From assembly GCA_002269645.1 (NCBI GenBank), contig NIVC01004550.1, positions 1 through 42,267 of the forward strand: 42,267 nt of DNA. The letters run 5' to 3'. Below the pieces are notes generated by a model. That model saw only the letters and a program-made list of their open reading frames with translations. It had not been told where the DNA came from and made no database searches. A program made the translations under genes and the position numbers. Within the stretch, counting starts at the first letter, position 1. The number at the start of each line of letters is the position of its first letter. Origin of the DNA: Macrostomum lignano. Lineage: Eukaryota. Below are positions 3,383-41,005 of the stretch, piece by piece.

Positions 3383-3679
3383 GTGAGTAAAATCGAGTGG
3401 CTTATTGGTTACCCGTCTGACTCGTATTCGTGTAACATGTGTGAGTTCAAGGCTTAGCGCAATTGGCTCCGCCACCACTTGTCTCGTGGCTCGTGGTTCC
3501 CTCAAAAGTTACTGAATCTTAATCACATTGCTTAACCAGTTCGTAACTCCTGAACCAGGTGACTTCGTGACGCGTTCTTCTCATGAGTTTCGACTTATCG
3601 CCAACTGTATTTGGGTTTCTGAACGCTTTGAAAAAGTTTTTCTTAACAGTAAAGCCAATTGGTTTCTCATACCGCTCAG

Positions 3680-7318: not shown

Positions 7319-8410
7319 CTAACGCACGCTCTGTCGATTGCTGGCCGTCGAGCTGCTGCCAGAAGCGCCCGGTCGACGACGGCAGGAGGCGCAGCAGCAG
7401 CAGCACAGGGACAGCCACACTCGGCAAAACGCCTCTCGAAAGTTCCGTCCCATCAAGTACGTCACCCAGCACAGAGCGTTGTTCGCGTACAGCAGCGAGT
7501 TGAAGTGCCGCATCATCAATATGAAGAAGTTCAGTCCGAGCTTATTTAGAATTTGGACTTCGAGCAGAGCGCCGATGCTCCACGGCAAAGACGTGATCAG
7601 AAAGAAGACGTTGATGAAGACCAGCATGAGGCTGATCCGAACAAGCGACCTCTGTCGCTCTCGGTTGCTTCGCTGCTGCTGCTCAGAGCCGGCCGTGTCG
7701 GAGTGCATTCGCCGAGCGGTCCTGTTGTTCCAGGCCAGCAGCACGCAGATGACCACCGTGCCCGACGTCAGCGCCAGAACGAGGAACACCCTGCCGAAGT
7801 AGAACTCGACCGGCTGGTACACGAACATAAGGTAGTTCATGCTTCGTAATCCGCAGGTGTTTGTGGAGTCGTTCCACGTTCTATTCGCAATGAACATGAT
7901 CGGCAGTAGAAGTGACATTGCAGTGATGAGGCTCAGCATTACCCAGCTTCTCCGATGTGTCAGAATCACCTTGGCCTTCATCGGAACCGCTACTGCAATC
8001 AGCCGATCTACCGTGAGACCCAGTTGAAAAAACTGGGATCCCGCTAGCGCATAGTATGTAAAGAAGTCGTACACAATGCACCAAGCGAGTCTCCAGCCTC
8101 TCGGATCGGTGAACCAAGTCTACTTGTTTGTCTTCACGTAGAATGCCATGTAGCCAAAGTAGTGAGTGCTCACCTTGCACGTGAGAATGAGAAAGTCACT
8201 GGCAGTGATGATGGTGAGGTACTGCCTGGTGACGTAGGGAAACGACTTCCTGTTGGACACGATCACGTAGAAGGAGACGGCGTTCGCGACCGCTCCGACC
8301 AGACAGAGCAGCGGAAAGAGCCAGACGAAGACGTTCCAGATGAACCAGTTCCAGGTGGGGTCGTGGAACCAGGGCTCACTTGCAGCAGCTGTTGTATTGG
8401 TGCCCTTCAT
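7319..8410 (-). CDS. Intronless class A (rhodopsin-family, peptide-receptor-like) GPCR, 363 codons including one in-frame TAG at 8122-8120
   Basis: ORFs 8120..8416 and 7319..8074 are in the same frame, joined by TAG plus TWFTDPRGWRLAWCI. Seven hydrophobic segments; TM1 GAVAN, TM2 ASD, TM3 Cys and DRLIAV, ECL2 Cys (NTCG), TM6 LITSLP, TM7 ANNALCWVTY, helix 8 RNFR and a Cys cluster; N-terminal NTT sequon. ATG at 8410. Confidence 0.88.
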
Positions 8411-13924: not shown

Positions 13925-14224
13925 GTAAGCATAAAAACAAGTTTACCGTACGGATGTATCTAACTTTCCAGCTTTTCCATGATGAACCACTGGTTTTGCA
14001 TCTGACATTAGTCCGATTAAGTGCGTAAAGAACAAGAAGGAATAGACTTGCAGAACCAAAAGGTGGTCGTCTGGTATTGTGGTTTGCAGGCGTTAACCTC
14101 ACATTTCTCACAAGAGGAGACTCAGAGGGCCTATATGCTCTAAGCAATAACTCTCGGCGGAGTTTTCTGGGTTTGTAGCATAAGGAGGGTTGCCAATTTT
14201 CTCCTTTGCGACATAAATTTTCAG

Positions 14225-15610: not shown

Positions 15611-15628
15611 ATGTGCAAAGCCACTCTT

Positions 15629-15876
15629 TGCTGCTGGCCTGGAACAACAGGACCGCTCGGCGAATGCACTCCGACACGGCCGGCTCTGAGCAGCAGCCGC
15701 GGAGCAACCGAGAGCGACAGAGGTTGCTTGTTCGGATCAGCCTCATGCTGGTCTTCATCAACGTCTTCTTTCTGATCACGTCTCTACCGTGGAGCCTCGT
15801 CGCCCTACTTGAAGTCCCAAATCATAAAAATACTCAAACTCAACTCATTCATATTGATGATGCGGCACTTCAACTC
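15629..15876 (+). pseudogene. Internal GPCR fragment (ICL3-TM6-start of TM7)
   Basis: LLAWNNRTARRMHSDTAGSEQQPRSNRERQRLLVRISLMLVFINVFFLITSLPW is nearly identical to the 7319-8410 gene; no 5' or 3' remainder. Confidence 0.92.
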
Positions 15877-17893: not shown

Positions 17894-19319
17894 TGTTATG
17901 GTTTAGAATCTCCGGGGGTCCGGTCAGTTTAGGGTCTCCCCTGGAGACTTCTAACGGTTATGGGTCTCCGGGGTAGGAGATCTGAAACCGTTTAAGGGTC
18001 TCCGGGGCATTTTCAGGTCTCCGCACCCGGAGATCTTAAACCAGTTTCTGATCTCCCCCCAGGAGACTCTAAACCAGTTTCAGCTCTCCGTCAGGGCCGC
18101 AAAAACAAAGTCCTGGTTTAGGATCTCCGGTTTCCGATCTCCCCCCCCCATTTGTGTAAAACCAATGGTCATGGTATTGAACGCGTACATGTATAAGAAG
18201 TGGAAAGGCATTTTTATCATCAAGGTAGCATTAGTTTTATATGTATATGCTCGCACAACTGTGTATTTAAATGGAAAACTGTTTACTGTTAAAGTAATGA
18301 AGTAAATGTCCGCTTAGTGAAAAACCGGTGATGCACTTTCAGCCGGTGCTTGGAGGAAGCATCTCTTGAGGTGTTTCCCATTGACACACCTGGTTAGTCC
18401 TCCTAGCCTGTACACGTTTTGACCAAGACACCTGGTCACGATGTAGACTTGCTGACTCCAAGGGTATCGCATCTTACCACCCTTCCGATCGTCCCTGCGA
18501 AGATTGCGAAGCCTAACTCTGTCCCCTCGCTTCAGATCCTGAACCCCAGCTGCTCCCACGGTGTGACCAGCTCGCACCTGTCACAAGACTCGACCACTGC
18601 CTTGGCAATCGGTGTGACGGGGAGGTCAGCATAGTATCGTGCAGTAAAAAGGCTCACTGTGCTGTTGACACCCACGTGACTTCCTTGCGAGTGAAGGCTG
18701 CGGATCTTATCCCGTACCTCTTCCTCTGTGAAAAGTACTCTGCGATGGTCTTCAGGCCGCATTCGCTGACTGTCGTCCTTATTAGTCACCCTGTGGTAAA
18801 GCGCTCCGTCATGGATGGAGAAACGCTTGCTTTTTTCTCTAATACGTCTTTTTAAGTTGGCCTTATCTTTGGCGTCCAATCTGGCTGGTACCTGCGTATA
18901 TTCATTGTTTAGGACGTAGAAAAATATTTGATTGAGCGAAGCCATCAAGCTTTGAAATGCAGAAATCGACGAAAATCACACAGCACAAACCTTTCTTATC
19001 ATCTGCCCAATATAAATGTTTACAGCGCTTCCCGCCACCCATAAAATATGAGTACAAAGCTGATCTCCAAAATGTGCAAAGCCTATTGAAAGTTACGCAA
19101 GACTGCTCACACTTTGGGGTGCCAATCTCGATGTACATAGAAGTAGCGATAATTTTCATATAGAAAAGAACCGCGGAGATCCTAACACGGCGGAGACCTG
19201 TAACTCTATCTTATGTTATGGTTTCCGATCTCCGTGTGGGCGATCTTAAAATGACACAATTTTCAGTTTGTGATCTCCGGGCCGGAGACCCTAAAACGCG
19301 GAGATCCTAAACTCTAACA
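17894..19319 (-). mobile_element. Ginger DNA transposon, internally deleted (non-autonomous) copy, 1426 bp
   Basis: TGTTA...TAACA termini; CCGG TSD at 17890-17893 and 19320-19323; many GGAGATC/GATCTCC subterminal repeats; both ends homologous to the 29984-35504 element. Confidence 0.92.
18314..18945 (-). pseudogene. Ginger integrase remnant: N-terminus plus H2C2 zinc finger fused out of frame to the C-terminal domain; DDE core deleted
   Basis: MASLNQIFFYVLNNEY...LHSQGSHVGVNSTV...CDRC, then KRGDRVRLRNLRRDDRKGGKMRYPW...VNGKHLK in another frame. Confidence 0.9.
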
Positions 19320-24223: not shown

Positions 24224-24629
24224 GTATGCATAGAAAGAAGTTCAGGTAGCCAAGGTAGACGAGTAGAGGAGCTCAACTTTTGCCTATTCACCGTCATAAG
24301 AGACAGGCAACCTGCTAAGACAGCAAATATAGGCGCACTTCTGGACTGCGGCCCCTCCAATTAAAATTGCTGCGTACGCACTGACCAGCGATCAGTTATC
24401 GGTCCCTGTGGCTTCCGTCAGCGACCATTCGTTGGGCCTATTTCTTTCGTACCTGATTAATTGAAAATTCTTTTTTTCGTCACGGTTTCTCAAGGGTTCT
24501 CAAATATTAATGCAGATCCCATAAAGCAATTTGCATATTTTAAAAGCTCAAACTTCGTAATTTTAATCTGTACGTTGCTAAACACTCCGACGTGTGGTCA
24601 TGATGCATTTTAAATTCGTCTTGATCTGA

Positions 24630-26345
24630 CTTGACTTAGCGACAGGGGTTTCCGGGCATCCGGATACAGCAGGGAGGGGTCGCCCATTCCGCTAACCGCT
24701 GGCGACCACGGGCAGCTGGTGCTGGGGTGTCGCGCAGGGAGATGCGGTGTGCCGGTGTCTCTGTCCGCCGGGAGAGTGGTTCGGTGGGCCTAGCTGCGGT
24801 GCGGCACGTGGGAAAGAGCTGGTGAACATGGCGTCCAGCAATTTCCTGGGTTCTCAGAAAGCGGGCCATCCGGTCTTTTAATTACTAAGAGAGAGCTTTG
24901 ACATTTTTGAGAGTGAGAGCCTCGATCACGCGTCATCACGGGTGGGTGCCTTCTGACTCCGCGCAGTATTGGCGCCACTTGTCGGACTTGGCTTTCCTCG
25001 CTCTTCTTCGTCGCTATTAGTACCCAGAGAGGAACATCACGAGCACAGAGAGGCAAAACAATGGCCTTAAAAGCCAAGACGAGCAGAAAACAAAAAAGGG
25101 AAAAAAACTTAAACCAGCAACGTTAGCAGGAGACGCAAAAGAAAGTAGGTAACGCCGTTAAAACTGGACATAGACCCCCCCGAGCAAAGGAAGCAGACGC
25201 CGCCACCGCCTGACAGAGCTGCGGCAGGTACCGCTGCACCGCACTGCTCCTCCAGTCCCCGATGCGCATGACATCCGACACGGGCGGACCCAGCGCCGAC
25301 ACCCAGGTCGCACCCCCCGCCGCAGGCTGTGGGTGGAGAAAAACTCGCGATTGAAATCGGCCGCGGCCAGCTTGCTGCTGAGAAAGCGGTCCAGCTGCGG
25401 GCCTGTCGGCAGACGCCGGTTGCCTCGGGCATCGCATAACGACCAGAGGGGCTGATCGGCCGACACCAGCCGATTCTCACAGATGTGTCGCTTGAGGCAG
25501 CGACAGGACACAGTGCCAGCCGTCGAGCCAGCCTTGGGAGAAAAACCAGATGCACGCCGCTCCTTAAACTGATGGTCTTCCGAATCGCAGCGCAGGGCAA
25601 GGACCCTGGGGTACCTCTGCGTTGCATGAGTGCTCGGCCCTTAGATGTTCGACGGAGCAGGTTAGACTTGCGGAGCATAACCGCCAGCAGCAGTTGACTG
25701 TCGCCCAGCATGCTAGCTGAAACTTGGCCCCGTCGACTTGGTGCTGCAGATCCACCAGCATGAAGAGGGATACCGGCCACTTCTTGGTAGCTGGAAGTTC
25801 CAACTCGCGTTTGGCGCCACGTGGAAGCAGTGCCGTGGCAGCATGGTTGGTCAGGTCTAGCGCAGAGTTGACTCAGAACCAGAGCGACAGGGAGCTGGCC
25901 ACAGAGGAAACACCGCTGAAGGAGCGCATCCGGGTGCCCACAAGGTCAGCCAGATAGTTGAGCAGAGCTACTACAGGACAGTGGACCGAGTCCCAATCAA
26001 ATTGCCGGCAAAACTCACGCCGACAAATTGTTGGCGCATACGAGGCGCTCAGCAGCAAGGCGTCGCGGTGGATGAGTGGGTCCGGCGCATCTTGGCGGCC
26101 TGTAAATGAAGGGAGGCGGTGGTGGCGGGGCAGAAAGGCATGCATCTGCAGAGTCGCCAGCGTCCACTGGCACAAAGAAGCATGTCAACGGAGTAAAAAA
26201 GTTTAACAACTGGCTAGGCTCATGCAGCCGAGAATTCGAATCCGCAAAAAGCTGGAACTCGCCCGATATGTGAAAGGCACAAACACTCATCCCAATGCGC
26301 AGTCATTGCCTTCCTCTTGAAGGTCTGAGGCCCTGTTGTCCATCC
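24630..26345 (-). mobile_element. DIRS/Ngaro-type tyrosine-recombinase retroelement, 5'-truncated and frameshifted, inside the intron of gene copy B
   Basis: RNase H end HISGEFQLFADSNSRL, then YR N-terminal region (LLSASYAPT...HCPVVALLNYLADL), ALCPVAA, FFSTHSLRRG (25340-25314) and GGATWVSALG...MRIGDWRSSAVQRYL, spread over several frames. The 3' boundary is approximate. Confidence 0.82.
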
Positions 26346-26487
26346 ATTTCGATTATGTTCTGAGTAGCGGCAGGATTTGAGTGAGAGTCCACCGGAAGTT
26401 CCGGTGTTGCAAATGTCTGATCGAGCCGCGGTACCAACCTCGGTTGGCGTTTCAGCAGCATCAATAGACGTGCTAGAAGTAATTAAT

Positions 26488-26802
26488 ATGATAATAATAA
26501 TTGATTAGACCTATCTAATTGGGCAGATGTGCAACCGACAGCTCAGCCGCAGCTACTGTGCGGCACATCTGAAGGCTGCGTACGGCTGTTCAGTCCAAGG
26601 ACTGGGGGGTCGCCACACACAGCCTCAATTACCCCAGCTAGCTAATGCTGGCGCCCATTTTACAGCTGGGTGAACTGAAGCAATGCGGAGTCAAGCGTCT
26701 TCCTGAAGGACACATATTGTTCCGAGTGGGTCGAGAATCGAACCCCCGATTCCAGTCCTACCAATCGTGAGTCCGACGCTCCAACCACTAGACTACAACC
26801 CC
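26488..26802 (-). mobile_element. tRNA-derived SINE (CORE-like), copy 2
   Basis: Minus strand GGGGTTGTAGTCTAGTGGTTGGAGCGTCGGACTCACGA...GGTTCGATTC; body colinear with 11331-11590; (TTA)n-like tail. Confidence 0.85.
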
Positions 26803-27944
26803 AAATTACAGGAAGCAATTAGAATACTCAATGAGTCGCTGAAAGGCGAATGCGTACTAAAGGTGAGAGACTGCTAGGCCGTAACCCCAAACCCAACAGC
26901 CAGCCAAAAGATAGCGACCGGGGGTGGCCTAAGCCCTTACCGGCCCAACCGCTAGCAACCGAGAAGCTCCCCAGCTAAGAGCCCCGCTTGTAGAAACCAG
27001 AAGCCGAACCAAAGGTCCACCAGCGCGGTGCTACTCTGGGCCCTCGAGGGAGACAAGAGGGCTGTCTCCGGAGACTGGGACTGGTCGCATACCCTGTTAG
27101 GTCAGAGGGTGATAACTGTTTCTTAGAGCCGTAACCAGATGTGCCTCATAGGCACAAATTCCCTTCCGGGCAAAGCCGGTACCCAAAACGGCCAAGCCAA
27201 GGCCACGGATGGGTTGCCGCCGTCAATCCAGCAGCCCTAGAGCTGCCTTGAACACATGCTGTTCTGGAGTTCCATTTCTATATAATTTAGGGGTTTTTCT
27301 TGTTGTCTACTCGTAATTGTACATGCATTTTATCTCTTTAATGTACATGAGCCATCCGCTCTCTCTTCTGCTTAACCCACCCCACGTTAAATCTCGTAAA
27401 AAGGCACGATATTTTGATTAAGTGCATTTTAGGTGTTTTTTATGCCTGCGCGAGATCGCAGGATTGGTGAAGGCAAAACCTTTTAAACATCCGATTTTTC
27501 TTTGTTTATTTTTTGTTCTGAAAATATTATTCGATTGAACATGTGGGATGGGAACGCCTGGGTCAACTTGTGGGTCAGCTTAGAGAGAGTTCTCCCGCCA
27601 TTCCTGCACGAATGGAGAGGAGTGGGAACGAGATAAAAGAGGAAAGTAGATTAAAAAGAAAAGAGCTGAGAAGAGGCACCAGCCTTGAGCAGACGGTATA
27701 GAGGATTCAAGCACCGGATACAGAGACTTTGCGGTCGGATGTTTGGCGACCCCTGATTAAAATAGACAAACGCTGCACACGCAATTCGCACAATTCGTTT
27801 TAAGCTTTCTCTGCTGCATTCGCGAGATATATGATATTCACACGTTTTCTAGCTCCAAGCTTCCAAAATTTCCCCTCTGGACTTCCGAATTTCAAATTCA
27901 ATTTAAATCAATTCAATTTTCTCCTTTGCGACATAAAATTTCAG

Positions 27945-28688
27945 TGCCAACCTCGGGTTCAAAACAACATGGAACGCCGGTGACCTACACGCCCCCTGTG
28001 GACAATGCCTGCTATCGGTTCGAAGCGCGTGGCGCCAAAGGAGGTTCCGGAAGCGCAGCCGGTGGATGGGGCTATAAAAATTGCCCACTTTATCCTGAAC
28101 AGCTCTCAGACGTTGACTATTGTTGTCGGAAAACCCGGAAACAATGGCGATGGCGGCGGCGGCGGAGGCGGCACTTTCGTCTACACGAGTGGCGGCAGTC
28201 CCGTCCTGCTGCTGGCGGCTGGAGGAGGAGGCGGTGGAGGAGGCGTCAGTTCGGCTACAGGCAGCCCTGGAATCAGTTCGACCGGCGGCTGCTCCGGATT
28301 GGCCAATCAAAACGCGGGAAGCAACCCGTCCGAAATTAACTGTGGCGCCGGCGGTGCCGGATGGCAATCACCTGGGACTCCACCTGGGGGCAGCCATTGT
28401 GGCTCAGTTGGAAGTAACTTGGCAGGAGGTGATGGCGCATCAGGCGGCTTTGGTGGCTACGGTGGTGGAGGCGGTGGAGGCCGATCAATGGGACCAAATA
28501 AGTCCGGAGGCGGCGGTGGCGGAGGCTACTGCGGCGGCTCCGGCGGGGCGCAAGACAATCCAGGTGGCGGCGGCTCCAGCTATGCAGCTTCTTCAGCCAA
28601 GCAAGTTTCAGGATCGGATGGAGGCAACACCGAAGCTGATGGCAAGCTAGACATATCTATCGTGGCTAGCTCCTTCTGTACACCGTGA
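27945..28688 (+). CDS. Copy B, exon 2: ALK/LTK-type glycine-rich domain (apparent 2-nt deletion at ~28067)
   Basis: Acceptor TTTCAG (ends 27944) with ~30 bp of intron conserved with copy A. GGTGGA-T-GGGGCT here versus GGTGGA-AAC-GGGGCT in copy A shifts the frame; the rest is open to TGA at 28686-28688. Confidence 0.8.
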
Positions 28689-29400
28689 TCACCCGATGGA
28701 AACGCTACCGTGTCAAGGATCACAAAACACATAAAATTCTAGTAACTTTGTGGCGACTCTTGTAAACTTTAACGACTCAAATGACTGTAATTCGACGTAG
28801 AGGCGAATGTGAATTCAGAAACGTGTCATGTGAGTTGTAGCTTCTTAAGAGTCGCAAAAGAGTCGTCCATGAGTCAATTTTAACAATAAACGCTGTTGGA
28901 ATGATAAAGGCGCATATTTGAGGGAAAGAGTCAATTTTTGAAGGCAATGTTTCGTCGATAGACAGAGACGAGTTGGTTTTTACATTTGATTTTAATTGAT
29001 ACGTTCGTGCCAATCACGTGTATTGCAATCGTCGAGAATGCCATGTTTGCCAGAATGGGAGAAAGGCAGTTGAACTTCCTGGCAGTTTCCTGCCACATAT
29101 TTGCTTGTAGTTTATTCGTTTTGCACACGGTTTCGCCTTAGAGTAAAAATACCGTATTGGTTGTAGACGCGGCTACATCTATCTGTGAACTTTTTTCTCG
29201 CTTTTATGGACAATGTTTGTGGACACGCATTTGATTCCAGCTAATCCACTCACACTTACAGGCAACTCTGTTGCTTTCAAAGCAAATTTACACACTGTAG
29301 GCAGTCAGTCAGTCTCGTGGCTCTTTCCCACTATGCTTTGCTAATGGAATGCAATTAAGAAAAAGCTGCATCGTAAAAGTCTTAGTGATAGTTTTTTCCC
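28689..29400 (+). repeat. Non-coding block 'R', copy 3 (3' of gene copy B)
   Basis: Colinear with 14962-15610 and 8440-9010. Confidence 0.75.
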
Positions 29401-29779
29401 AGAGACAGACCTGATAGACAGAGGCTCTGCGTTTGATGGACTCGCTCGCTCAACAAGTCAACATGCCACAGGGGTTATAAAGTTATCGATGAGGACAGCC
29501 TTTATTGACCGTTTGTCAAAGCTGAAAAGGCATCCTGGACGAGTCGCTGTGCTCGCAACACGGTCTGAAGCTTCTGAAAATTTAAAATAAATTTAGATAA
29601 TTCTCCGGTGTTATACATACGCAGGTTGAAGTTCATGTAAAATTGAGTGGCGCTACTGTCCACAGCTGACTCGTGCGATCATGACTTAATGCAAATTAAA
29701 ATAACGAGTTGACTTTCTAATCTGTTGGCGCCTTTTGCTCTTCCTAACTCCTTTCCTGTCTTGCTAAATATAAAAGATG

Positions 29780-29983
29780 TGTCGCAAATCGGACATGGAT
29801 TGACGTCACTAATACTTGCGGATTAAGAAGTGTAAACTACCTTAAGCTCGTGTACCAACCGGCCGAGTTCTACTTCGGCAGGGTGTTCCTCGTTCTGGCG
29901 CTGACGTCGGGCACGGTGGTCATCTGCGTGCTGCTGGCCTGGAACAACAGGACCGCTCGGCGAATGCACTCCGACACGGCCGG
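29780..29983 (+). pseudogene. GPCR paralogue, part left of the Ginger insertion (ECL2-TM5-ICL3)
   Basis: ANRTWIDVTNTCGLRSVNYLKLVYQPAEFYFGRVFLVLALTSGTVVICVLLAWNNRTARRMHSDTAG, ending in the CCGG TSD. Confidence 0.92.
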
Positions 29984-31281
29984 TGTTAGGGTTTCTGCTC
30001 TCCGGAGTTAAGGATCTCCGGCCCGGCGATCCAACCAAAAAAATTACGCGATTTTACAATCGCCCTCACGGATATCAGGAACCATGACATAAGATAAGGT
30101 TACAGATCGCCGCCATGCTAGACTCTCCGGAGTATTATTATCTTAGAAAATTGGAAGATAAGAGATAAATTACATTTCTCTGTTTCTAGAAAGCACAGCT
30201 CGTGAGCAGCCTGTAGCTTGCGCAACTTTTTCGATGAGTTCATCCATCTAGTGCATCGTACATTTGCATGCCCTGTGAGGGCTAAATTTAGAGTTGGCCA
30301 GACTTGTGCATCATTTTTCGTCTCTGTGCATTTGTCGAGGGATTTGATTGTCATATATAAGCAGTGAAATAAAACATATTGTGAGCAATTGTCTGTTTGC
30401 GGTTATCTTTACTTTCTACTTGTCAAATGGCTACTTTGAATCAAATATTCTTTTATGTACTGAACAATGACTGCGCACAAATTCCTGTTGACTTGAACTC
30501 GAGAGAGAAAAGCAATTTGAAGAGGCGCATCAGGTAAAAGAGCAGAAATTTTAGCATTCACGATGGAGCATTGTTTTACATGGTGAAAAATAAAGATGGC
30601 AGTAAGCGCATGCGGCCCGAAGACAGACGCAAGGTGCTGTTTACCGAGCAAGAAGTGCAAGTAAAGGTTTTGAGCCTTCATTCTCAAGGGAGCCATGTTG
30701 GCTTGAACAGCACCGTGAGTCTTTTCACGGCAAGGTACTATGCCGATATACCTGTAACACCGATTGCCAAAGCTGTGGTTCAGGCGTGTGCGAGGTGCGA
30801 AATGGTCAACAAGAAGTTTTCTTCAGCGCAGAAGGAGCTGCATCCCATTGAAGTTTCCAGGAATGCAGAGCGCCTCTTCGGCTTTTTGTGCATGGACTGC
30901 ATCACAATGGAGGGCTCATCGGAAGTCAGAGTTTAAGGCAATGGCCTAATTGACACTCGCGGCTACCGCTAGTGTCGCTAGTGTAGCTACCGCCGCTCGT
31001 GTCAAAGGCCATTGCCTTAAACTCTGACTTCCGATGAGCATCATTGCTTAAAATTTCAAAACTCTTACGTAATCTACGCACTTTATGTACACTATCGTGA
31101 ATTCTTATCAGTCGATGCTGCTAAGGGGGTTTGAGATAAGGTTGCCTCCACCTCGCCTATGTCTCACCTTTAAGTCGCGCACCTGAAGTCAGCCACCCCT
31201 TACTCTGCACCCACCCCTAAATTAATTAAAAATATAAATATTTGCGTGTCTAGAGGTCAAATCTCAGATAGAGAAAAGCGG

Positions 31282-33479
31282 ATGGCTGCAGAGATGGAGG
31301 CACCGCTTATTAATTGGAAGTATTTGCCCTGCAGTGAGCTGGGCAACGTGACCAAGGACGAATTAAATTTTGTTTCGGAGGCTTCTTACAATGACAGAAG
31401 GGACGACGAGTTCGCTAGATTCTCGAATTCATTCAAAAGGAGCCCGAGCCCGATGAGCATCTGCCGCTCCTGCAGGAAGGCGGCGTAGATATCAGCGCCA
31501 TGGACATCGCCGAGATTGACAGCCTACCAGCAGACAGCAGGAAGCAGATGGACAGCGGTTCAAGACATTCCTCACAGAGGAAAATCTTCAGCGCAATTTA
31601 CAAACCATTCCGAATTCGGTGCTCAACCAATACATTCGCTACTTCTACTTTAAACTGAAGAAGATTGACGGCGAACCCTACTCGCCCGCATCGCTGGTGT
31701 GCATCAGGGCTGGACTGCAGCGCTATTTGCGGATGATCGAGAAGCTAACCGTTGACATCATCAATGGAGAAGACTTTTCTTCTGCAAATAGCATGCTGCG
31801 TGTGAAGGTTCGAGACTTTCACCAGAGTGGTGGGAGGACGCAGCAGTTTGAGCCAATCGAGGAGGGGGACATGAGGAGCTGATGATCTACTTCCAAGGCA
31901 GCACAGCTGAAGTTGAGCAGGACAAATTCTTATTCTACATCATATACAGCTTTGGCGAGCGAGGCCAGGAGCACCTCAAGTTCTTGAAGGATAGAAGCTC
32001 ACTTCAATTGCACGTCGACTCTGATGGAAAGCCGTACTACTGTCTGCCTCCGTTGCCCTCGAAAAATAAGTCAGCAGATCCAGAGAAGGCCAAGAAGCAG
32101 CCCGACAACAAGCAGGCCAGAATTTACGACGTGGAAAAGGTGGAGAAATACCTCAAGCTGCTTCCAGTTACAACGAAGGACAACAATCTGTTTCCTCGTC
32201 CTTTGGCCAGCCGCAACGATGGAGGCCCTGTTTTCTCCTCGAAGCAGAACCGTGGAGAGAATTATCTGAGTGGCTTCATGAGAAACTTGAGTACGAAGGC
32301 GGGACTTGCGAAGACCTACCAAGGACGACTTAAGTAGAAGGACGGGAAACCTCGTTTCTTAGAAAATTTTTGAAGGCACTTTTTCCCGAAAAAATACACT
32401 GCGGAGATAGGAAATTTTCATTTTTTCAGCACAAAAATTGCTATAACTTTTGATAGGAGGCAGATCCAGTGTTGATCTTTTGATATGTTGTGCCTTTTTT
32501 ATTGCTCTATCGATATTTATAAAGCTTTCCGTTCAGAAAATTAGGATTGTATGTTAATTTTTTATTCTACGTATATTTTCATGTGTCTTGTGCTTGAAAT
32601 ACATTAGAATGCCACGGCTCGGCTCTTTGGTTTTATGAGTCTATTTTATCCTTCTTACCTGACTGTATAGCAAATAGTCGTAACATAGATGATAAAATAG
32701 ATTCATAAAACCAAATATTAGAGCTGTGTCATGCATTTTTGTGATTTTTAGATACAGGAAATATCCGTAGAATAAAAAATTAACATAGAATCCTAATTTT
32801 CTGAACGGAAAGCTTTATAAATATCGATAGAGCAATAAAAAAGGCACAACATATCAAAAGATCAACACTGGATCTGCCTCCCATCAAAAGTTATAGCAAT
32901 TTTTGTGCTGAAAAAATGAAAATTTCCTATCTCCGCAGTGTATATTTTTTCGGGAAAAAGTGCCTTCAAAAATTTTCTAAGAAACGAGGTTTCCCGTCCT
33001 TCTACTTAAGTCGTCCTTGAGACCTACACGAATCATTGCATTCGGTAAGACTGATAAATTAATAATAGTAACTTTAATTATGTTATGATACATGTTATGT
33101 TACCAATTACTCATGAATCCAACTATATAAATTTGCACTCTAAAACAGGGTCACGCGAATATGCGATCTCGAGGCGGCAGGGCACAGAATGAGCGATATA
33201 ATGAGCATTACTGGACAGCTGAGCGAGCGAGCGACTAGGAGGTACCTAGCCAAGCGTCGCGACCGGTCGCTTCAAAAGACGAGTGAGTCTGTTCAAGTGG
33301 CATTGAATCGTCATGATCTAGAGCAAGAAGCTGGGCCACCCGAACATGCTGATGCTGTTGAGATCGTCGGTGAGACTGTAGTATCGACGGAGGTTAGTGT
33401 TAGCACTGAAGCTGCCTATTCTGTTGATACGAAGTTTGCCTTCAACAATTGCACCTTTCACGGATGTTCCTTTAATTAG
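31282..33479 (+). pseudogene. Crypton-type tyrosine recombinase (DUF3504-like), frameshifted and interrupted
   Basis: KKIDGEPYSPASLVCIRAGLQRYL; FGERGQEH (catalytic R); SKNK; GLAKTY|TNHCIR after removing the foldback; intron 33045-33148 (GTAAG...ACAG); VTRICDLEAAG..IMSITGQLSERATRRY (catalytic Y); C-terminal FNNCTFHGCSFN. Frameshift at ~31875 and further indels 5'; start position approximate. Confidence 0.85.
32320..33019. mobile_element. 700-bp non-autonomous foldback element (hAT or P superfamily), ~265-bp TIRs, 8-bp TSD
   Basis: CAAGGACGACTTAAGTAGAAGG... and ...CCTTCTACTTAAGTCGTCCTTG; arms pair almost perfectly to ~32588/32752; TSD AGACCTAC at 32312-32319 and 33020-33027. Confidence 0.95.
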
Positions 33480-34639
33480 GCATGCAATCTCTACTTCTAC
33501 AGGAATCAGCAAATTGTACTCGTAGAATTACTGAAAGAATAAGAACGACAGTCTAGTATAATATTTTTTATTTAATGACTTTTAGTACTTTGCTCGACCA
33601 GTATGATGTTCATCACCGACAAAAATTTACATGATATACTGACACTGTGCTTTTTGTACTGTCGATTTTGCAATTCCTGTGCCAGTTTAATTATTTACAT
33701 CTTAAAATAAACGTTTTGAATTGACTGATGCAAGATACGCTTTGCAAGATGCTGGATAAAAACTGGCTTGAATTAATTGGTTGCATTGAAATTGGAATTC
33801 TAGGCAATGGCCTGCCATCGCCATGGGTCATTGCCATGAGGAGAAATTTTGGGCAATGCCGACTACCACACCAAACGGTTCGAAATATATCCTGACTGTA
33901 TGCTGCAAGTTTACAAAATTTTCCATTTTTCGGGCGTTGCCGAACATCAAAGCGCTGACTATCGCAGCCGAGTTAAAAAGCATCTTCGCGCTTTTTGGCT
34001 GGCCATTTGTCATTCTCAGCGATCAAGTACGCGAGTTTTGCAACTCTGTCTTGGACGCCCTGCTGCAGTCCGGAGGAACGAAAAGAAGAGTGACCAGTGT
34101 TTACTACCCACAGGTAACCTTAACAGTAATGTTTTATGCTTCTGATATTATGTAGCAGTGGTGCATCATTTTTAAGTACGAGTAAATAACTAATTTTCTC
34201 CAGACAAACGGTCAGACTGAGCGCCTCAACCAAACGTGCATTAATCTACTGAGAAAGCGGTGTGATTCTGAGGAACCAACTAACTGGGATTCCATGCTGA
34301 ATGATGTTCAACTCGCATACAACAGCCGCCGACATTTGGTGACAGGCTTCTCGCCGTGCAGGTAAAATATGAAAGTAATAAAGTTTATAGAGAATCAAGT
34401 ATATTTTATAAAGCATATTTCTATACTGTAGCAGACAATGTTAGTTCATATGCCTCCATTCATCTTTAGAGCCGCCTTTGGCTTTGAGCCATTGCTAGGC
34501 GATCATGCCGCAGCACTGGCTTCGGTTCCGGAGCCGATGGAAATCAACAGGCGATTGCTTGCCAACAAGGACAAGAAGCGAGCCGCAGCGCGAAAACTAA
34601 TTGCGCGTAGAATCAAGATCGCTCAAGAAAAGATGCGAC

Positions 34640-34650
34640 CAAGGACCTTG
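34640..34650. mobile_element. 11-bp collapsed remnant (CAAGGACCTTG) of the same foldback family
   Basis: Flanked by the 8-bp duplication GATGCGAC (34632-34639, 34651-34658); consists of the two termini of the 32320-33019 element; removing 19 bp restores the integrase frame. Confidence 0.8.
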
Positions 34651-35504
34651 GATGCGACAGCGTCACTTGGTTTCGGCTGCTGGAGCTCAAGAGCTAAAGC
34701 GAGGAGACAGAGTTCGGCTTCGAAATCTGCGGAGGAATGATCGAAAGGGTGGCAAGATGCGATACACCTGGAGTCAGCAGGTCTACATCGCGACGAGGTG
34801 CCTCGGTCGCAACGTATATCGATTAGGAGGTCTCACTAGACGTGTCAATGGCAGGCATCTCAAGAAGTGCTTTCTACAAGTACAATGGTTGAGCAAATCT
34901 CCAGTTTTTTATTAGAATCGCATGCGGGATTCTGAACTGACAGCACTCGTACGAGTATTTATCAAAGGTTTCCAGCTCGTATTTTTGCCCTGGTATGGTG
35001 CATCACAGCTGCAAAATATACTGGCTACAGTGAAACGTTAAACTACGATCTTACGGAATGTAAAATGTCTTGAAATGGAAAAAATGACTGACATTGTTAG
35101 CGATTTTTACTACCTTTTATGCTTCGATGAAAATTGTTAAACGGTTAAGAGAAGGAAACTACAACAACACTCGTTGCACGATTACGATTTCGGACTTTAT
35201 AAAAATGGGGAGATCGGTAACCGGAGATCCTAAACCAAACCTTAGTTTTTGCACTCGTGACGGAGATCGGCAAACGGTGTAGAATCTCCGAGGGGATAAC
35301 AGAATCTGGTTTTGCATCTCCGGATAGGGAGACCTGACCATGCCCCGGAGATCCCACAACGGTTACGGATCTCCGATTGTGGAGATCCCTAACCGTTTGT
35401 ATTCTCCGAAGGAGATCCTAAACCCTTTAAGATCTCCGGTCGGAGATCCCAGCCCGTTTGCAGTCCAAAACTGACCAGAGCCCCGGAGTTTCTAAACCGT
35501 AATA

Positions 35505-35824
35505 CCGGCTCTGAGCAGCAGCAGCGGAGCAACGAGAGCGACAGAGGCCGCTTGTTCGGATCAGCCTCATGCTGGTCTTCATCAACGTCTTCTTTCTGAT
35601 CACGTCTTTGCCGTGGAGCATCGGCGCTCTGCTCGAAGTCCAAATTCTAAATAAGCTCAAAGTGAACTTCTTCATATTGATGATGCGGCACTTCAACTCG
35701 CTGCTGTACGCGAACAACGCTCTGTCCTGGGTGTGACGTACTTGATGGGACGGAACTTTCGAGAGGCGTTTTGCCGAGTGTGGCTGTCCCTGTGCTGCTG
35801 CTGCTGCGCCTCCTGCCGTCGTCG
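35505..35824 (+). pseudogene. GPCR paralogue, part right of the Ginger insertion (ICL3-TM6-TM7-Cys tail), with small indels
   Basis: Near-identical to the reverse complement of ~7370-7695; truncated after CCTCCTGCCGTCGTCG. Confidence 0.92.
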
Positions 35825-37955
35825 CTCCAATTTTGCGTAGAGGGTAAAAATATAGCGCTGAACTAAAATTTCATGTTGCTGAATTAGTCACAATGAGCGT
35901 AGATGGCTTATAAATATCAAAGAAGACAACATTTTTAGTAAAAAAATAATATTTTACTGCATTGTCGATTCAGCTCTGTCCAAATATTGGTCATAGCGTT
36001 TCCAGCTGATATCGGCAAAAGAGTGTGTTTGAGCACGTCAGGAGTCGGGATACGACATCTTAGTGAGCTAGCTACTAGTGACCTAGCCTGAAGGTTAAGC
36101 TTCAGGCTTAGGTATAGAAATCAAGGTTTTGCATAGGGTTTAGGTTTTAGGGTCAAAGCAGTAAAATTGTCTCGGTAAGGTCAGACAGGTTCACAGATAA
36201 TAAATTACTAGATATTTCACTCTGCATTGAGTTAAGCCATTTTTGTGTTATAGTCTGTGGCTCAAAAAGTGTCTACTCTTTGGATGAGCGTCAGTGTGCG
36301 CATAGCAAGAAAAATTGCTAGTTGCTCCAAAAAGAATTTTGACGCAAGGCACTGCGTGCCTACGGGTGCACGCATCCATGTTCGTTCACGCTACTAACCA
36401 AAGAGTAGTTGCAAAAATCTAAACAAGAGTGAACTATCTAGGGTTATTGTATCTGTGGACAGGTTTAGTTGTTTAGTTGCATTTAGAATATATGCACCTT
36501 TTTTCATTTAAATTACGTCCAATCCTTTAGTACTGGTTTTAAGCTGTCATTATGGAATCTCTCAAGATTGGTTGCCTAGGTTTTACGAGTTTAGAGAGCC
36601 AGATAGCAAGAGATTTAAACTTGTAATACATAGCGTCTAATTGACACAATCTGAAGTTTGACAACCTCGTATAAGAGTCATCTAATCGAGCAAGTGCATT
36701 TTTGAACTGTTGACTGCCTTTATGCTTATCTTTCATCGATACAAAGTGTTAAGGTCAGATTCTCCATAAGTGCACAGAAGCTACAGCAGCCAAGAAAGTT
36801 TGGCGCTGACAGCGAAGAAAACCTGCAATAAATTCTTCATGACACGATTAGACCTTTTATTTGAGTAGGCCATCCTTGTGTCAAGGCCAAAGTATAGACC
36901 AATTTGAGTTCAGTTCCTCCATGCCTTTAGCTCGGATATAGTATTAAGTCGGAAGAACGAAACCGCGGATAGCAAATATCGTCCATAAATGTGATTATCA
37001 GCTTATCAGCTGCCAAAATTGTCACCTTAACTCAGCTAACGTACATGTAGAACCAGAGGATTCCGCCAGCAAGACATTATTTGTAGCCGATCTGGAACTT
37101 AATTGGTCTAAAAGTATAGCTATAACCACAATGGATCAAGAGGGCCAGAGAACTTTAATTGCAATAATAGCGAGGGTACCATAGATGGAAATTGCGGAGG
37201 TGACAGAGAAGAACAAAAGAGTCATTAAACACAGTAGATAGTACGTTTGGATGCCTTCGATACCGAGCTGATATGAGCGAGGACAAGAAAAATTTATGAA
37301 ACAACTTTGCAAGCACCGTATCGAAACAATTGTTGTGTGCTGCACTTCGGTATACTACAAGGGCACTCCGTCCTATGCGTGTACTCTTACTGGATTTTCT
37401 TTGTTTATTTACTCTAATTGTTTTGGCGTCTCGGCTCTGGCTGGTTGGCGGCGGGCCCCGGGCTGAGACTTTGTGACTTCCCCGTCAGGTGTCGCCAGCT
37501 GATTGGTTGAGCCAGGCGTTTTTGTCTCTCCCGCTGTTACTGTAACTTTTTTGCTGCTCTCTGATTGGCTAGGGGTGATGGGCGCTGGGTGTCCCTCCCC
37601 CCGGGCAGGGTGGTGGGCTGGAAGGTGTGAGCCGTTTTTAGATCCGTACATGCTGTTGAAACCCGCGGATTTTGAACCCGTGGAATTCTAATCCTCGGAA
37701 CTATTTTTGCATGTATTCTAGAATCTGAAGTCATACTAAAAAAAACTTGTTAATAGTTAGGATAGAGGTACGTAAATATAAAATGGTGTAAATTCGTGCA
37801 AAATTAAAATTTTTGGCAAGCATTGATCTCGTTGGCTAGGGTGCTGCGCAGAATGTCAGGCAATGTCTGTCTAAAACATGTACGAGCTATTGGCAAACTC
37901 TGGCCTCTGCCTCTGCCTGTACGTCCCTCGGATCCTTGAAAACTTCTATCCTCTC

Positions 37956-38559: not shown

Positions 38560-41005
38560 TCGCGCTGCTGGTGACCGTCATTGCGGAGTCCGCGGCCGGC
38601 GGCTGCGTGGTCTGACGCAGGCGGAAGGACTCCAGTACGCCCGTCGCCCTCAAGGACACCGAGGTTAGGGGTCAGGAATACAACCACAGCCGGCGCCTGC
38701 GGCCGGTCTCGCCTGGATGCGGTAATTGACCTCGCCCAGGCGCCTCAGGACTCGGTACGGCCCCTTCCATTGGCGCTCAGGCACCGCGTCTGGCCGCGCT
38801 TGACGACGGAGTTGCGCAGCATCACGAGCTGGCCCTCTTCGAACGGCACCGAACCGAGAGTCCTGGTTGGCCAGCCGGTGGCATCGAACCTGGGCGCTCC
38901 GCAGTCTGGTGTCGAAAGCGCTCTGCAGGTTCTCCTGAGTCGTGCAGGAAGCCGTGATTCCACGTCGGCTACCTCACGGTCGCCGCTTATCAGCCAGCTG
39001 TCGAGATCCACTCGGTGGCCAGCCGTGGAGGACCTGGTACGGACTGAGGCCGGTGGTGCTGTGCACGGAGGTGTTGTAGGCCCAGGTCACATACGGCAGC
39101 TTGCTGTCCCAATCCTGCTGGTTCTCGGCCACCGTCGTCGCCAGCATATCGCCGAGCGTCCGGTTGCCTCGCTCGACGATTCCGTTGCCACTCGGATGAA
39201 ACGGCGACGTGCGCGTCTTTAACGCCCAGCTGGTCGGAGCCGGTCGAACATCTCGCTCAATTTCCCTGGTCACTGTGCAGCCCTGAGGAGCGCCGGACGC
39301 ACCAGGCGACAGAGCATCATCAGCCAGTCACCGCTCGATCTCCGCCAGTGAGCGCCGCTCCATCACTTGGGAAGAAGGCGAACATCTCAGGATGTTCACT
39401 TCCATCAGAGTACGCGGAAGCTCGCCCTTTGATGTCGACTGCACAGCTGCCACGAGCCGTCGGCTGTCAGTCGCTGGCGGCGCCTTCTGCGGCGGTGGAC
39501 ACTTGGCAGGCAGCTCGCGAGCTGGGCAAGTTCTCGACGTCCCGTCGCAGACCAGGCCACCAGCAGCGCTCAGACAATCTCGCTCCGGTCCTGTCGACGC
39601 CGAGGTGTCCGCTCTGGTCGCACGAGTGCGCCTGCTGCAGGAAATGCGGCCGCAGGTGACCGGGAATGACTGACCGCCACCCACCAGCAGGACACCCGCC
39701 GAGCTCACCGAGGCCTCGTCCAGCAGCTCGCGAACCTGCGCCGCCCACGAATCGGACAGGCTGTCAATCCTTCGGTCAGTGCCTGGAACGCCTTGCTCAG
39801 CAGCGGGTCTTGCAGTTGCTCCTCGTGCAGGCGGCTGTCGTCCCACCGAGGCTGCAGGCGCGTGCGGCCACCCGGCTCAGCGCATCCGGCACGACGTTGT
39901 CCCTGCCAGGCCGGTACAGCAGCTCGAACGAAAACTGCTGCAGCGTAGAAAGCCATCGCGCCAGCCGACCTTCGGGGTCCTTCGTTGTCAGCAGACCTTG
40001 CAGTGGCCGGTGGTCCGAGTAGACTCTGAAGCTCGGGACACTCAGCAGGTACGTCCTGAAGTGCTTCAGACTCCAGACCAGCGCCAGCAGCTCGCGGTCG
40101 GTCGCCGAGTAGTTGCGCTCGGCCTTGTTGAGGGTGCGAGAGGCGAACGCCACAGGCAGCTCGGCGTCACGTGCAGCTGGCTGAGCACCGCGCCGACGGC
40201 GAACTGACTGCTGTCGCAGCTGAGCACGAACTGCTTGGTAAAATCCGGCAGCCTCAGCACCGGAGCCGTCGTCAGCCGGTCCTTCAACTCGCGGAACGCT
40301 CGCTCGCAGTCGCTGCTCCACGCGAAGTCCCTCGATTTCACGCTGACGTCGTGCAGGACCCTCGCCGTCTGGCTGAAGCCTGGGATGAACCGACGGTAGA
40401 ACCCCAGCATTCCAAGAAACCGCTTCACCTCCTCGGTCGTCGTTGGGCTGGGCATGCTGCGAATGCATCGACCTTGCCGGGATCCGGGCAATGCCCTGCT
40501 CGCTGATCAGGTGTCCAGGTACAGCCCCGGCGATGGCCGAACGCGCACTTGGCCTTGTGCAGCTTGAGTCCCGCGTCTCGCAACCGCTTAAAACTTCCGC
40601 CAGCCTCTCTAAGTGCTCGTCGAACGTCCTGCTGAAGACAATGATGTCGTCGATATAAGTCAGCACGGACTCCCAGGACAGGCCGGACATCACCAGCTCC
40701 ATGAGCCGCTGGAACGTCGCCGGGGCATTGCACATCCCGAAGCCCATCTTGCAGAATTGCATCAGGCCGCGCGTCGAATAGAAAGCCGTCTTGTACCGGT
40801 CCTCCTCCGCCACCTCCACCTGGTGGTAGCCCTGCCGGCAGTCGATGGTGGAGAACCAGGAGCATCCGACAAGCGCATCCATGGCCTGCTGCAGGTGCGG
40901 CAGCGGGTACGCATCCTTGACCGTGCAGGCGTTGAGCTGCCACCAGTCGCGTGCACAGTCTGATGTCGCCGTTCTTCTTGCGGACCACCAGCAGGTGCTG
41001 TAAAC
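38560..41005 (-). mobile_element. Gypsy/Ty3 LTR-retrotransposon pol relic (RT-RNase H-integrase), heavily frameshifted, no LTRs identified
   Basis: VVRKKNGDIRLC; YPLPHLQ..FSTIDCRQGYHQ..KTAF..NAPATFQR..YIDDIIV; FVLSCDSSQFAVGAVL; RNYSATDRELLA; SDHRPL; RLARW; HSCDQSGHLG zinc finger; LHSDQG; HPSGNGIVERGNRTL; YNTSVHSTTGLSPY. Domain order RT-RH-IN. Confidence 0.93.

What the first reader, a model, noticed from the sequence alone, without database searches (positions are those of the whole stretch)
29980..35508. Four-level nested insertion series that can be undone to the base
GPCR paralogue < Ginger (CCGG TSD; empty site visible in two other GPCR copies in this window) < Crypton-like YR element (removal gives in-frame MDCITM|PTTT) < 700-bp foldback (removal gives AKTY|TNHCIR). 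After also removing the 19-bp remnant and two introns, the Ginger ORF is 1323 nt (440 codons plus stop) with one nonsense codon. This yields a relative chronology of three rarely co-reported DNA-transposon types, and each insertion hit the catalytic region of its host.
Basis: seen in the sequence. Interest (0 to 1): 0.8.

Follow-up and report, generated by a model that had tools for sequence, protein, structure and literature searches.

The report
Nested transposons in a flatworm pseudogene
Three DNA transposons sit one inside another in a broken receptor-gene copy of a Macrostomum-type flatworm; every junction can be undone to the base, but such nests are ordinary in repeat-rich genomes.

Summary
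Window 29980-35508 holds a Ginger1 element (29984-35504, CCGG duplication). It sits in a truncated, frameshifted GPCR fragment whose two paralogues carry one uninterrupted CCGG.

A 2,949-bp Crypton (30910-33858) lies inside the Ginger1 integrase gene. It encodes only a tyrosine recombinase, makes no target duplication, and has CAATG at both ends.

A 700-bp foldback (32320-33019, 8-bp duplication AGACCTAC) lies inside the Crypton, two codons before its HxxR motif.

New points:
- The 19-bp remnant is a footprint of a second foldback of the same family. It has two intact 8-bp duplications around CAAGGA+CCTTG, which fits P-element-like excision better than hAT.
- The Crypton ORF has three frameshifts, so it was probably already defective when it inserted.
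- The host is only the 3' part of a GPCR gene.

The "catalytic region" remark is coincidence. The chronology orders the joining events, not necessarily events at this locus.

Verdict: real, a tidy textbook example, new members of known superfamilies, low-to-moderate interest.

The parts
29784..29983 (+). 5' flank: truncated GPCR pseudogene fragment (TM5 and start of intracellular loop 3)
   Evidence: 90.5% identical to 7888-7689 and 100% identical over its last 55 bp to 15629-15683; 7tm_1 match
29980..29983 (.). Left copy of the CCGG target-site duplication of Ginger1
   Evidence: Single CCGG at the empty sites 7689-7692 and 15680-15683
29984..35504 (+). Ginger1-type DNA transposon (5,521 bp as found; 2,553 bp without the Crypton and the 19-bp remnant)
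   Evidence: CCGG duplication; termini TGTTA...TAATA (the second copy has TAACA); 16/24 terminal inverted repeat; rve integrase ORF
35209..35448 (+). Subterminal GGAGATC repeats of Ginger1 (about 10 copies, both orientations), likely transposase binding sites
30427..30909 (+). Ginger1 integrase exon 1, first part (H2C2 zinc-finger motif, first catalytic Asp at 30895-97); TAA nonsense codon at 30535-37
30910..33858 (+). Crypton-type tyrosine-recombinase element (2,949 bp; 2,241 bp without the foldback and one duplicate). CAATG lies at both boundaries (30905-09 in the target, 33854-58 in the element); there is no target duplication
30914..31039 (+). 126-bp terminal hairpin of the Crypton (34-nt perfect arms containing GGCAATGG)
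   Evidence: I4; -57.5 kcal/mol, z = -15.5
31282..33044 (+). Crypton recombinase exon 1, interrupted by the foldback. Frameshifts: 1-bp deletion near 31422, roughly 10-bp deletion after 31550, 1-bp deletion near 31877
   Evidence: tblastn against intact relatives P0001, P0007 and P0004
32312..32319 (.). Left copy of the 8-bp duplication AGACCTAC of the foldback (right copy at 33020-33027)
32320..33019 (.). 700-bp non-coding foldback element. Termini are CAAGGACG...CGTCCTTG. The outer ~254 bp of the arms are ~99% identical; the centre is degenerate; 33% GC
33045..33148 (+). Crypton intron (GT-AG), at the same position as in the related Logan contig L001
33149..33479 (+). Crypton recombinase exon 2, carrying the catalytic Tyr (..RRY..)
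33788..33835 (+). Third copy of the hairpin-arm motif, plus a small inverted repeat GGCAATGGCC-N13-GGTCATTGCC near the Crypton 3' end
   Evidence: D5, I6
33859..34915 (+). Rest of the Ginger1 integrase gene: exon 1b 33859-34113; intron 34114-34203; exon 2 34204-34361; intron 34362-34469; exon 3 34470-34915 (second Asp, Glu, SH3-like C-terminus)
34632..34658 (.). Footprint of a second foldback copy: GATGCGAC | CAAGGA CCTTG | GATGCGAC. Removing 34640-34658 (19 bp) restores the frame
35505..35830 (+). Right CCGG copy and 3' flank of the GPCR fragment (loop 3, TM6, TM7). 1-bp deletion at 35532/33 and 2-bp insertion at 35731-32 relative to the paralogues
   Evidence: 97.2% identical to 7692-7374
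7319..8074 (-). GPCR paralogue 1 with the empty Ginger site (CCGG 7689-7692)
   Evidence: 7tm_1 E = 1.5e-12; alignment
15629..15876 (+). GPCR fragment 2 with the empty site (CCGG 15680-15683). It is the counterpart of the host within the segmental duplication 13211-15876 / 22872-35699
17894..19319 (-). Second Ginger1 copy: a 1,426-bp deletion derivative, also flanked by CCGG (17890-93 / 19320-23)

Best explanation
The interval is a stack of mobile-element insertions in a dead 3' fragment of a rhodopsin-type GPCR gene. The genome is that of Macrostomum lignano or a close relative. Four events are recorded.

Step 1 (shown). A Ginger1 cut-and-paste transposon inserted at a CCGG in the TM5-TM6 loop. 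Its integrase-like DD35E transposase makes a 4-bp staggered cut, which duplicated the CCGG.

Step 2 (boundaries shown, mechanism inferred). A Crypton joined the Ginger1 integrase ORF four codons after the first catalytic Asp. The likely route is conservative tyrosine-recombinase crossover between CAATG in the element (probably as a circle) and CAATG in the target. This leaves CAATG on both sides and no duplication. The copy carries three frameshifts, so it was probably non-autonomous and moved by enzyme supplied in trans.

Step 3 (shown). A 700-bp non-coding foldback inserted two codons before the recombinase HxxR motif and made an 8-bp duplication.

Step 4 (shown as a scar, mechanism inferred). 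Another copy of the same foldback family entered the integrase 3' exon and was later lost. It left both 8-bp duplicates plus 6 + 5 nt of its two ends. That is the scar expected from staggered cleavage inside the element ends, as in P elements.

Nothing suggests a function for the host. It is a record of recent DNA-transposon activity.
For: Excisions and ORF.

Ginger1:
- The Ginger1 criteria are CCGG-specific 4-bp duplication, TGTNR termini, 0-4 GT-AG introns and a Gypsy-like integrase (PMC2836005).
- They are met by two copies in the window.
- The integrase matches Pfam rve at 32.7 bits.
- D157, D216 and E252 are invariant in the alignment with rve proteins.

Crypton:
- Relatives are named Tyr-recombinase proteins of M. 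lignano.
- 8 of 11 family members match PF00589 and 5 of 11 match DUF3504.
- The best solved-structure match is XerA.
- R139, K173, H261, R264 and Y296 are conserved.
- The 2.2-kb element holds only this ORF.
- Short terminal direct repeats and the absence of a target duplication fit the description in PMC3212892.

Foldback and footprint:
- P elements have 8-bp duplications and a 17-nt staggered cut (PMC7776569).
- hAT and MULE elements form hairpins on the flanking DNA (PMC5499845).

Organism: the second Ginger copy is 96% identical at protein level to an exonised stretch of an M. lignano protein.
Against: - No other copy of any of the three families at more than 80% DNA identity could be retrieved. 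Boundaries therefore rest on this locus plus protein alignments, and family ages are unknown.
- The Ginger1 terminal inverted repeat is short and imperfect (16/24; the 3' end reads TATTA, not TGTTA).
- The integrase has no OTU or Ulp1 domain, and its YPYY and GPY/F motifs are not clear.
- Pfam does not match the window's own Crypton translation to PF00589. It gives only a weak QRICH1 hit at 21.9 bits, below the cut-off.
- The Crypton has a long terminal hairpin and repeated subterminal motifs, whereas animal Cryptons were described as lacking terminal repeats.
- The superfamily of the foldback is inferred only from the duplication length, five terminal bases and one footprint.
Confidence: 0.85

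Rival explanations
1. The nest was not built in place. At least one composite moved as a unit by enzyme supplied in trans: either Ginger1 already carrying the Crypton, or the Crypton already carrying the foldback. The geometric order would then differ from the order of arrival at this locus.
For: Both carriers keep the ends needed for mobilisation. Non-autonomous relatives exist: a 1.4-kb Ginger1 derivative lies in the same window, and non-autonomous Cryptons are known. The Crypton ORF carries more lesions than the ORF it interrupts, although the GPCR flanks are still 97-100% identical to their paralogues.
Against: No second copy of any composite was found in the window or in the retrieved loci. 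The lesion counts (3 against 1) do not differ significantly.
Confidence: 0.25
2. The foldback and the 19-bp remnant belong to a hAT-type (or other) family. On this view the remnant is not a transposase footprint. It is what remains after a long palindrome was deleted by hairpin or cruciform processing or by replication slippage.
For: An 8-bp duplication and a CAAGG terminus also fit the hAT consensus as I recall it (own knowledge; not found in the paper library). The remnant is itself a perfect small palindrome, CAAGG-A-CCTTG, as expected from symmetric loss of a foldback centre.
Against: hAT excision makes hairpins on the flanking DNA and leaves no element ends. Both 8-bp duplicates are untouched, which fits cuts inside the element.
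Confidence: 0.4
3. The middle layer is a remnant of a tyrosine-recombinase retroelement (DIRS or Ngaro type) or a cellular DUF3504-type gene fragment, not a Crypton.
For: The window's own translation matches only the QRICH1 domain, and weakly. The element has inverted repeats around the ORF (I6). These repeats recall DIRS-like elements (own knowledge).
Against: - There is no RT or RNase H reading frame within 30910-33858.
- The insert is bounded to the base and restores the integrase frame.
- All catalytic residues are kept, whereas DUF3504 genes have lost them.
- The intact relatives are contigs of 1.8-2.0 kb that carry only this ORF.
Confidence: 0.05
4. Assembly artefact: the palindrome or one of the junctions was created by chimeric long reads or by a collapsed repeat.
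For: Long near-perfect palindromes are a known artefact of missed SMRTbell adapters (own knowledge). Two of the three Crypton frameshifts are 1-bp deletions, the kind of error long-read assemblies make.
Against: - Each junction has the exact signature of its transposition chemistry: 4-bp duplication, 8-bp duplication, and 5-bp identity with no duplication.
- Each removal restores a conserved reading frame.
- The foldback centre is not palindromic.
- A footprint of the same family lies 1.6 kb away.
- One Crypton lesion is a deletion of about 10 bp, not a homopolymer error.
Confidence: 0.03

Closest known systems
Ginger1 DNA transposons (Bao, Kapitonov & Jurka 2010, PMC2836005)
   Same: CCGG-specific 4-bp duplication; TGTNR terminus; cut-and-paste element encoding a single Gypsy-like integrase with an H2C2 motif and DD35E; GT-AG introns; size near the lower end of the reported range (2.55 kb against 2.6-7 kb).
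   Different: The integrase is only 440 aa and has no C-terminal OTU or Ulp1 protease domain (as in Ginger1-1_BF). The terminal inverted repeat is ~24 bp and imperfect, against 40-270 bp. The host phylum, Platyhelminthes, is not among the four species of that paper.
Animal Cryptons (CryptonA; Kojima & Jurka 2011, PMC3212892)
   Same: Only a tyrosine recombinase is encoded. It has an intact catalytic set and DUF3504/QRICH1-type similarity. There is no target duplication. A short (5-bp) direct repeat at both ends can serve as the crossover substrate. Non-autonomous copies exist.
   Different: It carries a 126-bp terminal hairpin and three or four copies of a GGCAATGG-containing motif near both ends. 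Two relatives share this layout. The paper reported no terminal repeats in animal Cryptons. Flatworms are not among its six phyla.
P-element-like (THAP9) non-autonomous elements, with hAT MITEs as the alternative
   Same: 8-bp target duplication. Short conserved terminus. An excision scar that keeps both duplicates and a few bases of each end, as expected from staggered cuts inside the ends.
   Different: The whole element is one long foldback (arms of about 330 bp). No transposase partner was identified. The superfamily is inferred, not shown.
Nested-insertion chronologies of transposons (maize intergenic nests; mammalian 'defragmentation' studies) - own knowledge
   Same: An interrupting element is taken as younger than the element it interrupts. 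Nests can be peeled back by their target duplications.
   Different: This is a single locus made only of DNA transposons, with two coding sequences serving as base-exact rulers.

Membership tests
Ginger1 | 4-bp target-site duplication, specifically CCGG (75%) or CCGT | tested here: met
   CCGG flanks both copies (29980-83/35505-08; 17890-93/19320-23). Two empty sites carry a single CCGG.
Ginger1 | Termini follow TGTNR...YNACA | tested here: met
   Copy 2 has TGTTA at both ends. Copy 1 has TGTTA at the 5' end and TATTA (one substitution) at the 3' end.
Ginger1 | Terminal inverted repeats of about 40-270 bp | tested here: inconclusive
   Only about 24 bp are recognisably inverted (16/24 in copy 1, 19/24 in copy 2). 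Beyond that there are subterminal GGAGATC repeats.
Ginger1 | Transposase with H2C2 zinc finger and DDE core like Gypsy integrase; no RT, RNase H or LTR | tested here: met
   Pfam rve at 32.7 bits (cut-off 32.6). D157/D216/E252 have 35 residues between the second Asp and Glu. HSQGSH...CARC is visible in the translation, although Pfam did not match the H2C2 model at E < 0.01. The remaining sequence of the element is non-coding.
Ginger1 | YPYY motif upstream of the zinc finger, and GPY/F motif | tested here: inconclusive
   The region is present, but the four conserved residues cannot be placed without the published alignment. The GPY/F position reads WSQQVY.
Ginger1 | C-terminal OTU or Ulp1 protease domain (all but one described family) | tested here: not met
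   The ORF ends at residue 440. No further Pfam domain is found, and no coding room remains before the 3' repeats. The published exception is Ginger1-1_BF, so this feature is not strictly defining.
Crypton | Encodes a tyrosine recombinase with the R-H-R-Y catalytic residues | tested here: met
   R139, H261, R264 and Y296 (plus K173) are conserved in an 11-sequence alignment. 8 of 11 members match PF00589. XerA is the best solved-structure match, E = 0.012.
Crypton | No reverse transcriptase (distinguishes it from DIRS and Ngaro) | tested here: met
   The 2,241-bp unit holds only the recombinase ORF, its intron and untranslated ends.
Crypton | No target-site duplication; 4-6 bp direct repeats at both termini | tested here: met
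   CAATG lies at 30905-09 and 33854-58. Removing 2,949 bp leaves one CAATG and an uninterrupted integrase frame.
Crypton | No terminal inverted or long direct repeats (animal Cryptons) | tested here: not met
   There is a 34-nt-arm hairpin 4 bp from the left end, and a 26-nt related copy 45 bp from the right end. L001 and L002 have a similar layout. These repeats are subterminal, not terminal.
Crypton | Moves through an excised circular intermediate | not testable with these tools
   Indirect hint only. Right end to left end of the window copy is colinear with end to start of contig L001.
P superfamily (non-autonomous) | 8-bp target-site duplication | tested here: met
   AGACCTAC x2 and GATGCGAC x2. 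hAT shares this feature.
P superfamily (non-autonomous) | Staggered cleavage inside the element ends, so that scars keep terminal bases | tested here: inconclusive
   A single scar keeps 6 + 5 terminal bases between intact duplicates. Palindrome deletion could give the same result.
P superfamily (non-autonomous) | A THAP9/P-type transposase partner with the same termini | not testable with these tools
   There is no other copy in the window, in the fetched loci or in the metagenome scan.

The most novel reading that the evidence does not exclude
The Macrostomum Crypton family may be recently or currently mobile, and this locus may capture one integration at base resolution. On this reading, crossover occurred within CAATG between a coding target and a circular element whose joined ends recreate the motif GGCAATGG. 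That motif is also present in a terminal hairpin and near the 3' end. If so, this would define a candidate recombination site for an animal Crypton. It would also show that these elements, unlike those described so far, carry structured subterminal repeats. Separately, the foldback footprint would point to an active P-like transposase in a flatworm.
Probability: 0.3. Interest if true: 0.5.

Novelty: new member of a known kind. Interest (0 to 1): 0.3.

Why it matters
The locus adds no new principle. It does give clean, curated reference examples of three DNA-transposon types in a flatworm that is used as a regeneration and transgenesis model.

Practical uses:
- Exact ends, target rules and intron structure are now available for building repeat libraries.
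- The near-identical foldback arms, the intact duplications and flanks 97-100% identical to their paralogues suggest these families moved recently. That bears on genome stability in Macrostomum lines.
- The Crypton junction comes with a known pre-insertion sequence. It offers a concrete substrate for testing the still unproven circular-intermediate model of Crypton transposition.

Tried and rejected
- Exact look-up of ten window ORFs, including junction-spanning ones, in the protein collection found none. No alternative haplotype or empty Crypton site could be retrieved.
- A homologue search with the GPCR paralogue gave no hit.
- A metagenome scan for the foldback terminus gave 0 hits. A scan for an 18-mer of the Crypton hairpin gave 13 hits, all 18-24-nt chance matches in unrelated contigs.
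- A literature search for the terminal consensus strings of hAT and P elements found nothing usable. That criterion rests on my own knowledge.
- No held paper describes Ginger or Crypton in flatworms.
- The 126-bp hairpin was considered as a separate, fifth inserted element. I rejected this because it has no duplication and relatives carry an equivalent hairpin at the same place.
- All Crypton frameshifts were considered as sequencing errors. I rejected this for the roughly 10-bp deletion.
- Contigs of P0004 and P0007 were fetched to compare element ends. They are too divergent or partial to help.

Full report
**What is there**

I read 29500-36200 and compared the interval with the rest of the window. 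The sequences flanking 29984-35504 continue without a gap in two other places. These are 7888-7374 on the minus strand (90.5% and 97.2% identity) and 15629-15876 (100% over 55 bp, then 89%).

A three-way alignment shows one CCGG at 7689-7692 and one at 15680-15683. The interval itself has CCGG on both sides, at 29980-83 and 35505-08.

The paralogue at 7319-8074 matches the rhodopsin-type 7TM model (E = 1.5e-12). The insertion point lies in the loop between the fifth and sixth helices.

The host copy is not an intact paralogue.
- Homology starts only at 29784.
- It carries a 1-bp deletion (35532/33) and a 2-bp insertion (35731-32) relative to both other copies.
- It belongs to a segmental duplication, 13211-15876 against 22872-35699.

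**Outer layer**

The inserted 5,521 bp begin TGTTAGGGTTT. In reverse complement they end TATTACGGTTT, with 16 of 24 terminal bases inverted. About ten GGAGATC repeats lie in the last 300 bp.

A second, 1,426-bp copy lies at 17894-19319 on the minus strand. It is also flanked by CCGG and has TGTTA at both ends. It is an internal-deletion derivative that joins about 30808 to about 34660 of the long copy.

I then removed the Crypton (30910-33858), a 19-bp segment (34640-34658) and two GT-AG introns (34114-34203 and 34362-34469). The reading frame from 30427 to 34915 is then exactly 1,323 nt. That is 440 codons plus stop, with one TAA at 30535-37. The second copy has GAA at that codon.

The protein has these features:
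- It matches the integrase core model rve (32.7 bits).
- It shows HSQGSH...CARC.
- It aligns with rve proteins so that D157, D216 and E252 are invariant, with 35 residues between the second Asp and the Glu.

The published definition of Ginger1 is a CCGG- or CCGT-specific 4-bp duplication, TGTNR ends, a Gypsy-like integrase, 0-4 GT-AG introns and a length of 2.6-7 kb (PMC2836005). The element fits these.

Three features depart from it or remain unclear:
- There is no OTU or Ulp1 domain, as in Ginger1-1_BF.
- The inverted repeat is short.
- The YPYY and GPY/F motifs are unclear.

GingerRoot has a 6-bp duplication. Ginger2 targets AT-rich sites and, according to PMC6839031, has a 6-bp duplication. 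Neither fits.

**Middle layer**

Deleting 30910-33858 (2,949 bp) joins MDCITM to PTTTPNGSKYILT. The distance from the catalytic Asp to YILT is then the same as in homologues. CAATG occurs at 30905-09 and again at 33854-58, and nothing is duplicated.

Without the foldback the insert is 2,241 bp and contains one gene. Its parts are an ATG at 31282, an intron at 33045-33148 and a stop at 33479.

The closest proteins are 'Tyr recombinase domain-containing' proteins of Macrostomum lignano, together with unnamed Logan and JGI proteins (44-69% identity).

Evidence that the gene encodes a tyrosine recombinase:
- In an 11-sequence alignment R139, K173, H261, R264 and Y296 are conserved.
- Eight of the eleven members match the phage-integrase model, and five match DUF3504.
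- The best solved-structure match of the profile is XerA.
- The window's own translation gives only a weak QRICH1 hit.

Alignment to intact relatives shows three frame-breaking lesions: a 1-bp deletion near 31422, a deletion of about 10 bp after 31550, and a 1-bp deletion near 31877. The intron position is shared with the genomic Logan contig L001.

These properties match the description of Cryptons (PMC3212892): recombinase only, no reverse transcriptase, no duplication, and a short direct repeat at both ends.

One difference stands out. A 126-bp hairpin with perfect 34-nt arms lies 4 bp inside the left end (z = -15.5). A related 26-nt copy and a small inverted repeat lie near the right end.

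The relatives L001 and L002 (M. lignano NIVC01002014.1) have comparable hairpins upstream of the gene and matching repeats downstream. Animal Cryptons were reported to lack terminal repeats.

If the two ends are joined, the junction reads GGGCAATG|GAGG. This recreates the GGCAATGG motif of the repeats. The joined sequence is colinear with end to start of L001. I treat this as a lead, not a result.

**Inner layer and the 19-bp remnant**

The foldback is 32320-33019. Its outer ~254 bp per arm differ at two or three positions and one 2-bp indel. Its centre is degenerate, and it is 33% GC.

The foldback is flanked by AGACCTAC on both sides (32312-19 and 33020-27). Removing it with one duplicate gives AKTY|TNHCIR, two codons before the HxxR motif.

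The 19-bp remnant reads GATGCGAC-CAAGGACCTTG-GATGCGAC (34632-58). That is an 8-bp duplication around the first six and last five bases of the same foldback termini. This layout occurs only at these two places in 42 kb, and never in 200 shuffles.

The remnant is therefore the scar of a second foldback copy. P elements make 8-bp duplications and cut 17 nt inside their ends (PMC7776569). hAT-type enzymes form hairpins on the flanking DNA (PMC5499845). A scar with intact duplicates and retained element ends thus fits a P-like element better.

Deletion of the palindrome by the host cell remains possible. No coding partner was found.

**Order and age**

Geometry shows that each carrier existed before it was interrupted. 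It does not show that the events happened at this locus in that order, because Ginger1 and the Crypton both keep the ends needed for movement in trans.

No close copies were retrievable.

The proxies available point to recent events:
- All duplications are perfect.
- The foldback arms are about 99% identical.
- The GPCR flanks are 97-100% identical to their paralogues over most of their length (the first ~60 bp of the 5' flank are more divergent).

The inner Crypton ORF has more lesions (three) than the outer integrase ORF (one nonsense codon). The difference is not significant. It is most simply explained by insertion of an already defective copy.

**Organism**

The second Ginger copy encodes a peptide identical at 100 of 104 positions to a stretch of an M. 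lignano gene model, A0A1I8JB73. The Crypton relatives are also from M. lignano.

Neither the GPCR nor the window ORFs are in the protein collection. The source is therefore M. lignano or a close congener. I found no paper describing Ginger or Crypton elements in flatworms.

**Verdict**

The locus is a neat but ordinary nest of known transposon kinds.

The modestly new points are the flatworm host, the structured Crypton ends and the P-like footprint.

Noticed in passing
window 17894-19319 (-): Second Ginger1 copy, a 1,426-bp internal-deletion derivative with a CCGG duplication. The same derivative appears to be exonised in an M. lignano EGF-like gene model (A0A1I8JB73; 100 of 104 residues identical).
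   Followed up: partly
window 13211-15876 and 22872-35699: Segmental duplication carrying a PAN/mucin-like gene, a Gly-rich gene and the GPCR fragment. The second copy is expanded by a PTTTTT repeat array, about 3.6 kb of extra GC-rich DNA and the Ginger nest.
   Followed up: partly
window 30914-31039 and 33788-33835; L001 8-123 and 1919-1963; L002 5617-5745 and 7547-7569: Three related Cryptons share a layout. A hairpin of a 20-36-nt motif lies upstream of the gene, and further copies lie downstream. Published animal Cryptons were said to lack terminal repeats.
   Followed up: partly
L001 (Logan SRR28338156 contig, 1,963 bp), ends: End to start of this contig aligns colinearly with right end to left end of the window Crypton. 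The contig may derive from a circular or tandem form, or may be permuted.
   Followed up: partly
window ~25120-25510 (-): Frameshifted remnant of another tyrosine recombinase (..STHSLRRG.. and ..GDWRSSAVQRYL.. in adjacent frames). Pfam PF00589 gives only E = 0.01 on a hand-joined peptide.
   Followed up: partly
window 39797-41177 (-): Frameshifted Gypsy-type reverse transcriptase and RNase H, in a block of 63-65% GC. This is far above the window average.
   Followed up: partly
window 4359-5230: Tandem array with a period of about 92 bp, about 96% identity between units. It lies downstream of a split sulfotransferase gene (1581-4043).
   Followed up: no
L002 6001-7350: The M. lignano Crypton relative P0006 is encoded without the intron that the window copy and L001 have after HCIR.
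   Followed up: no
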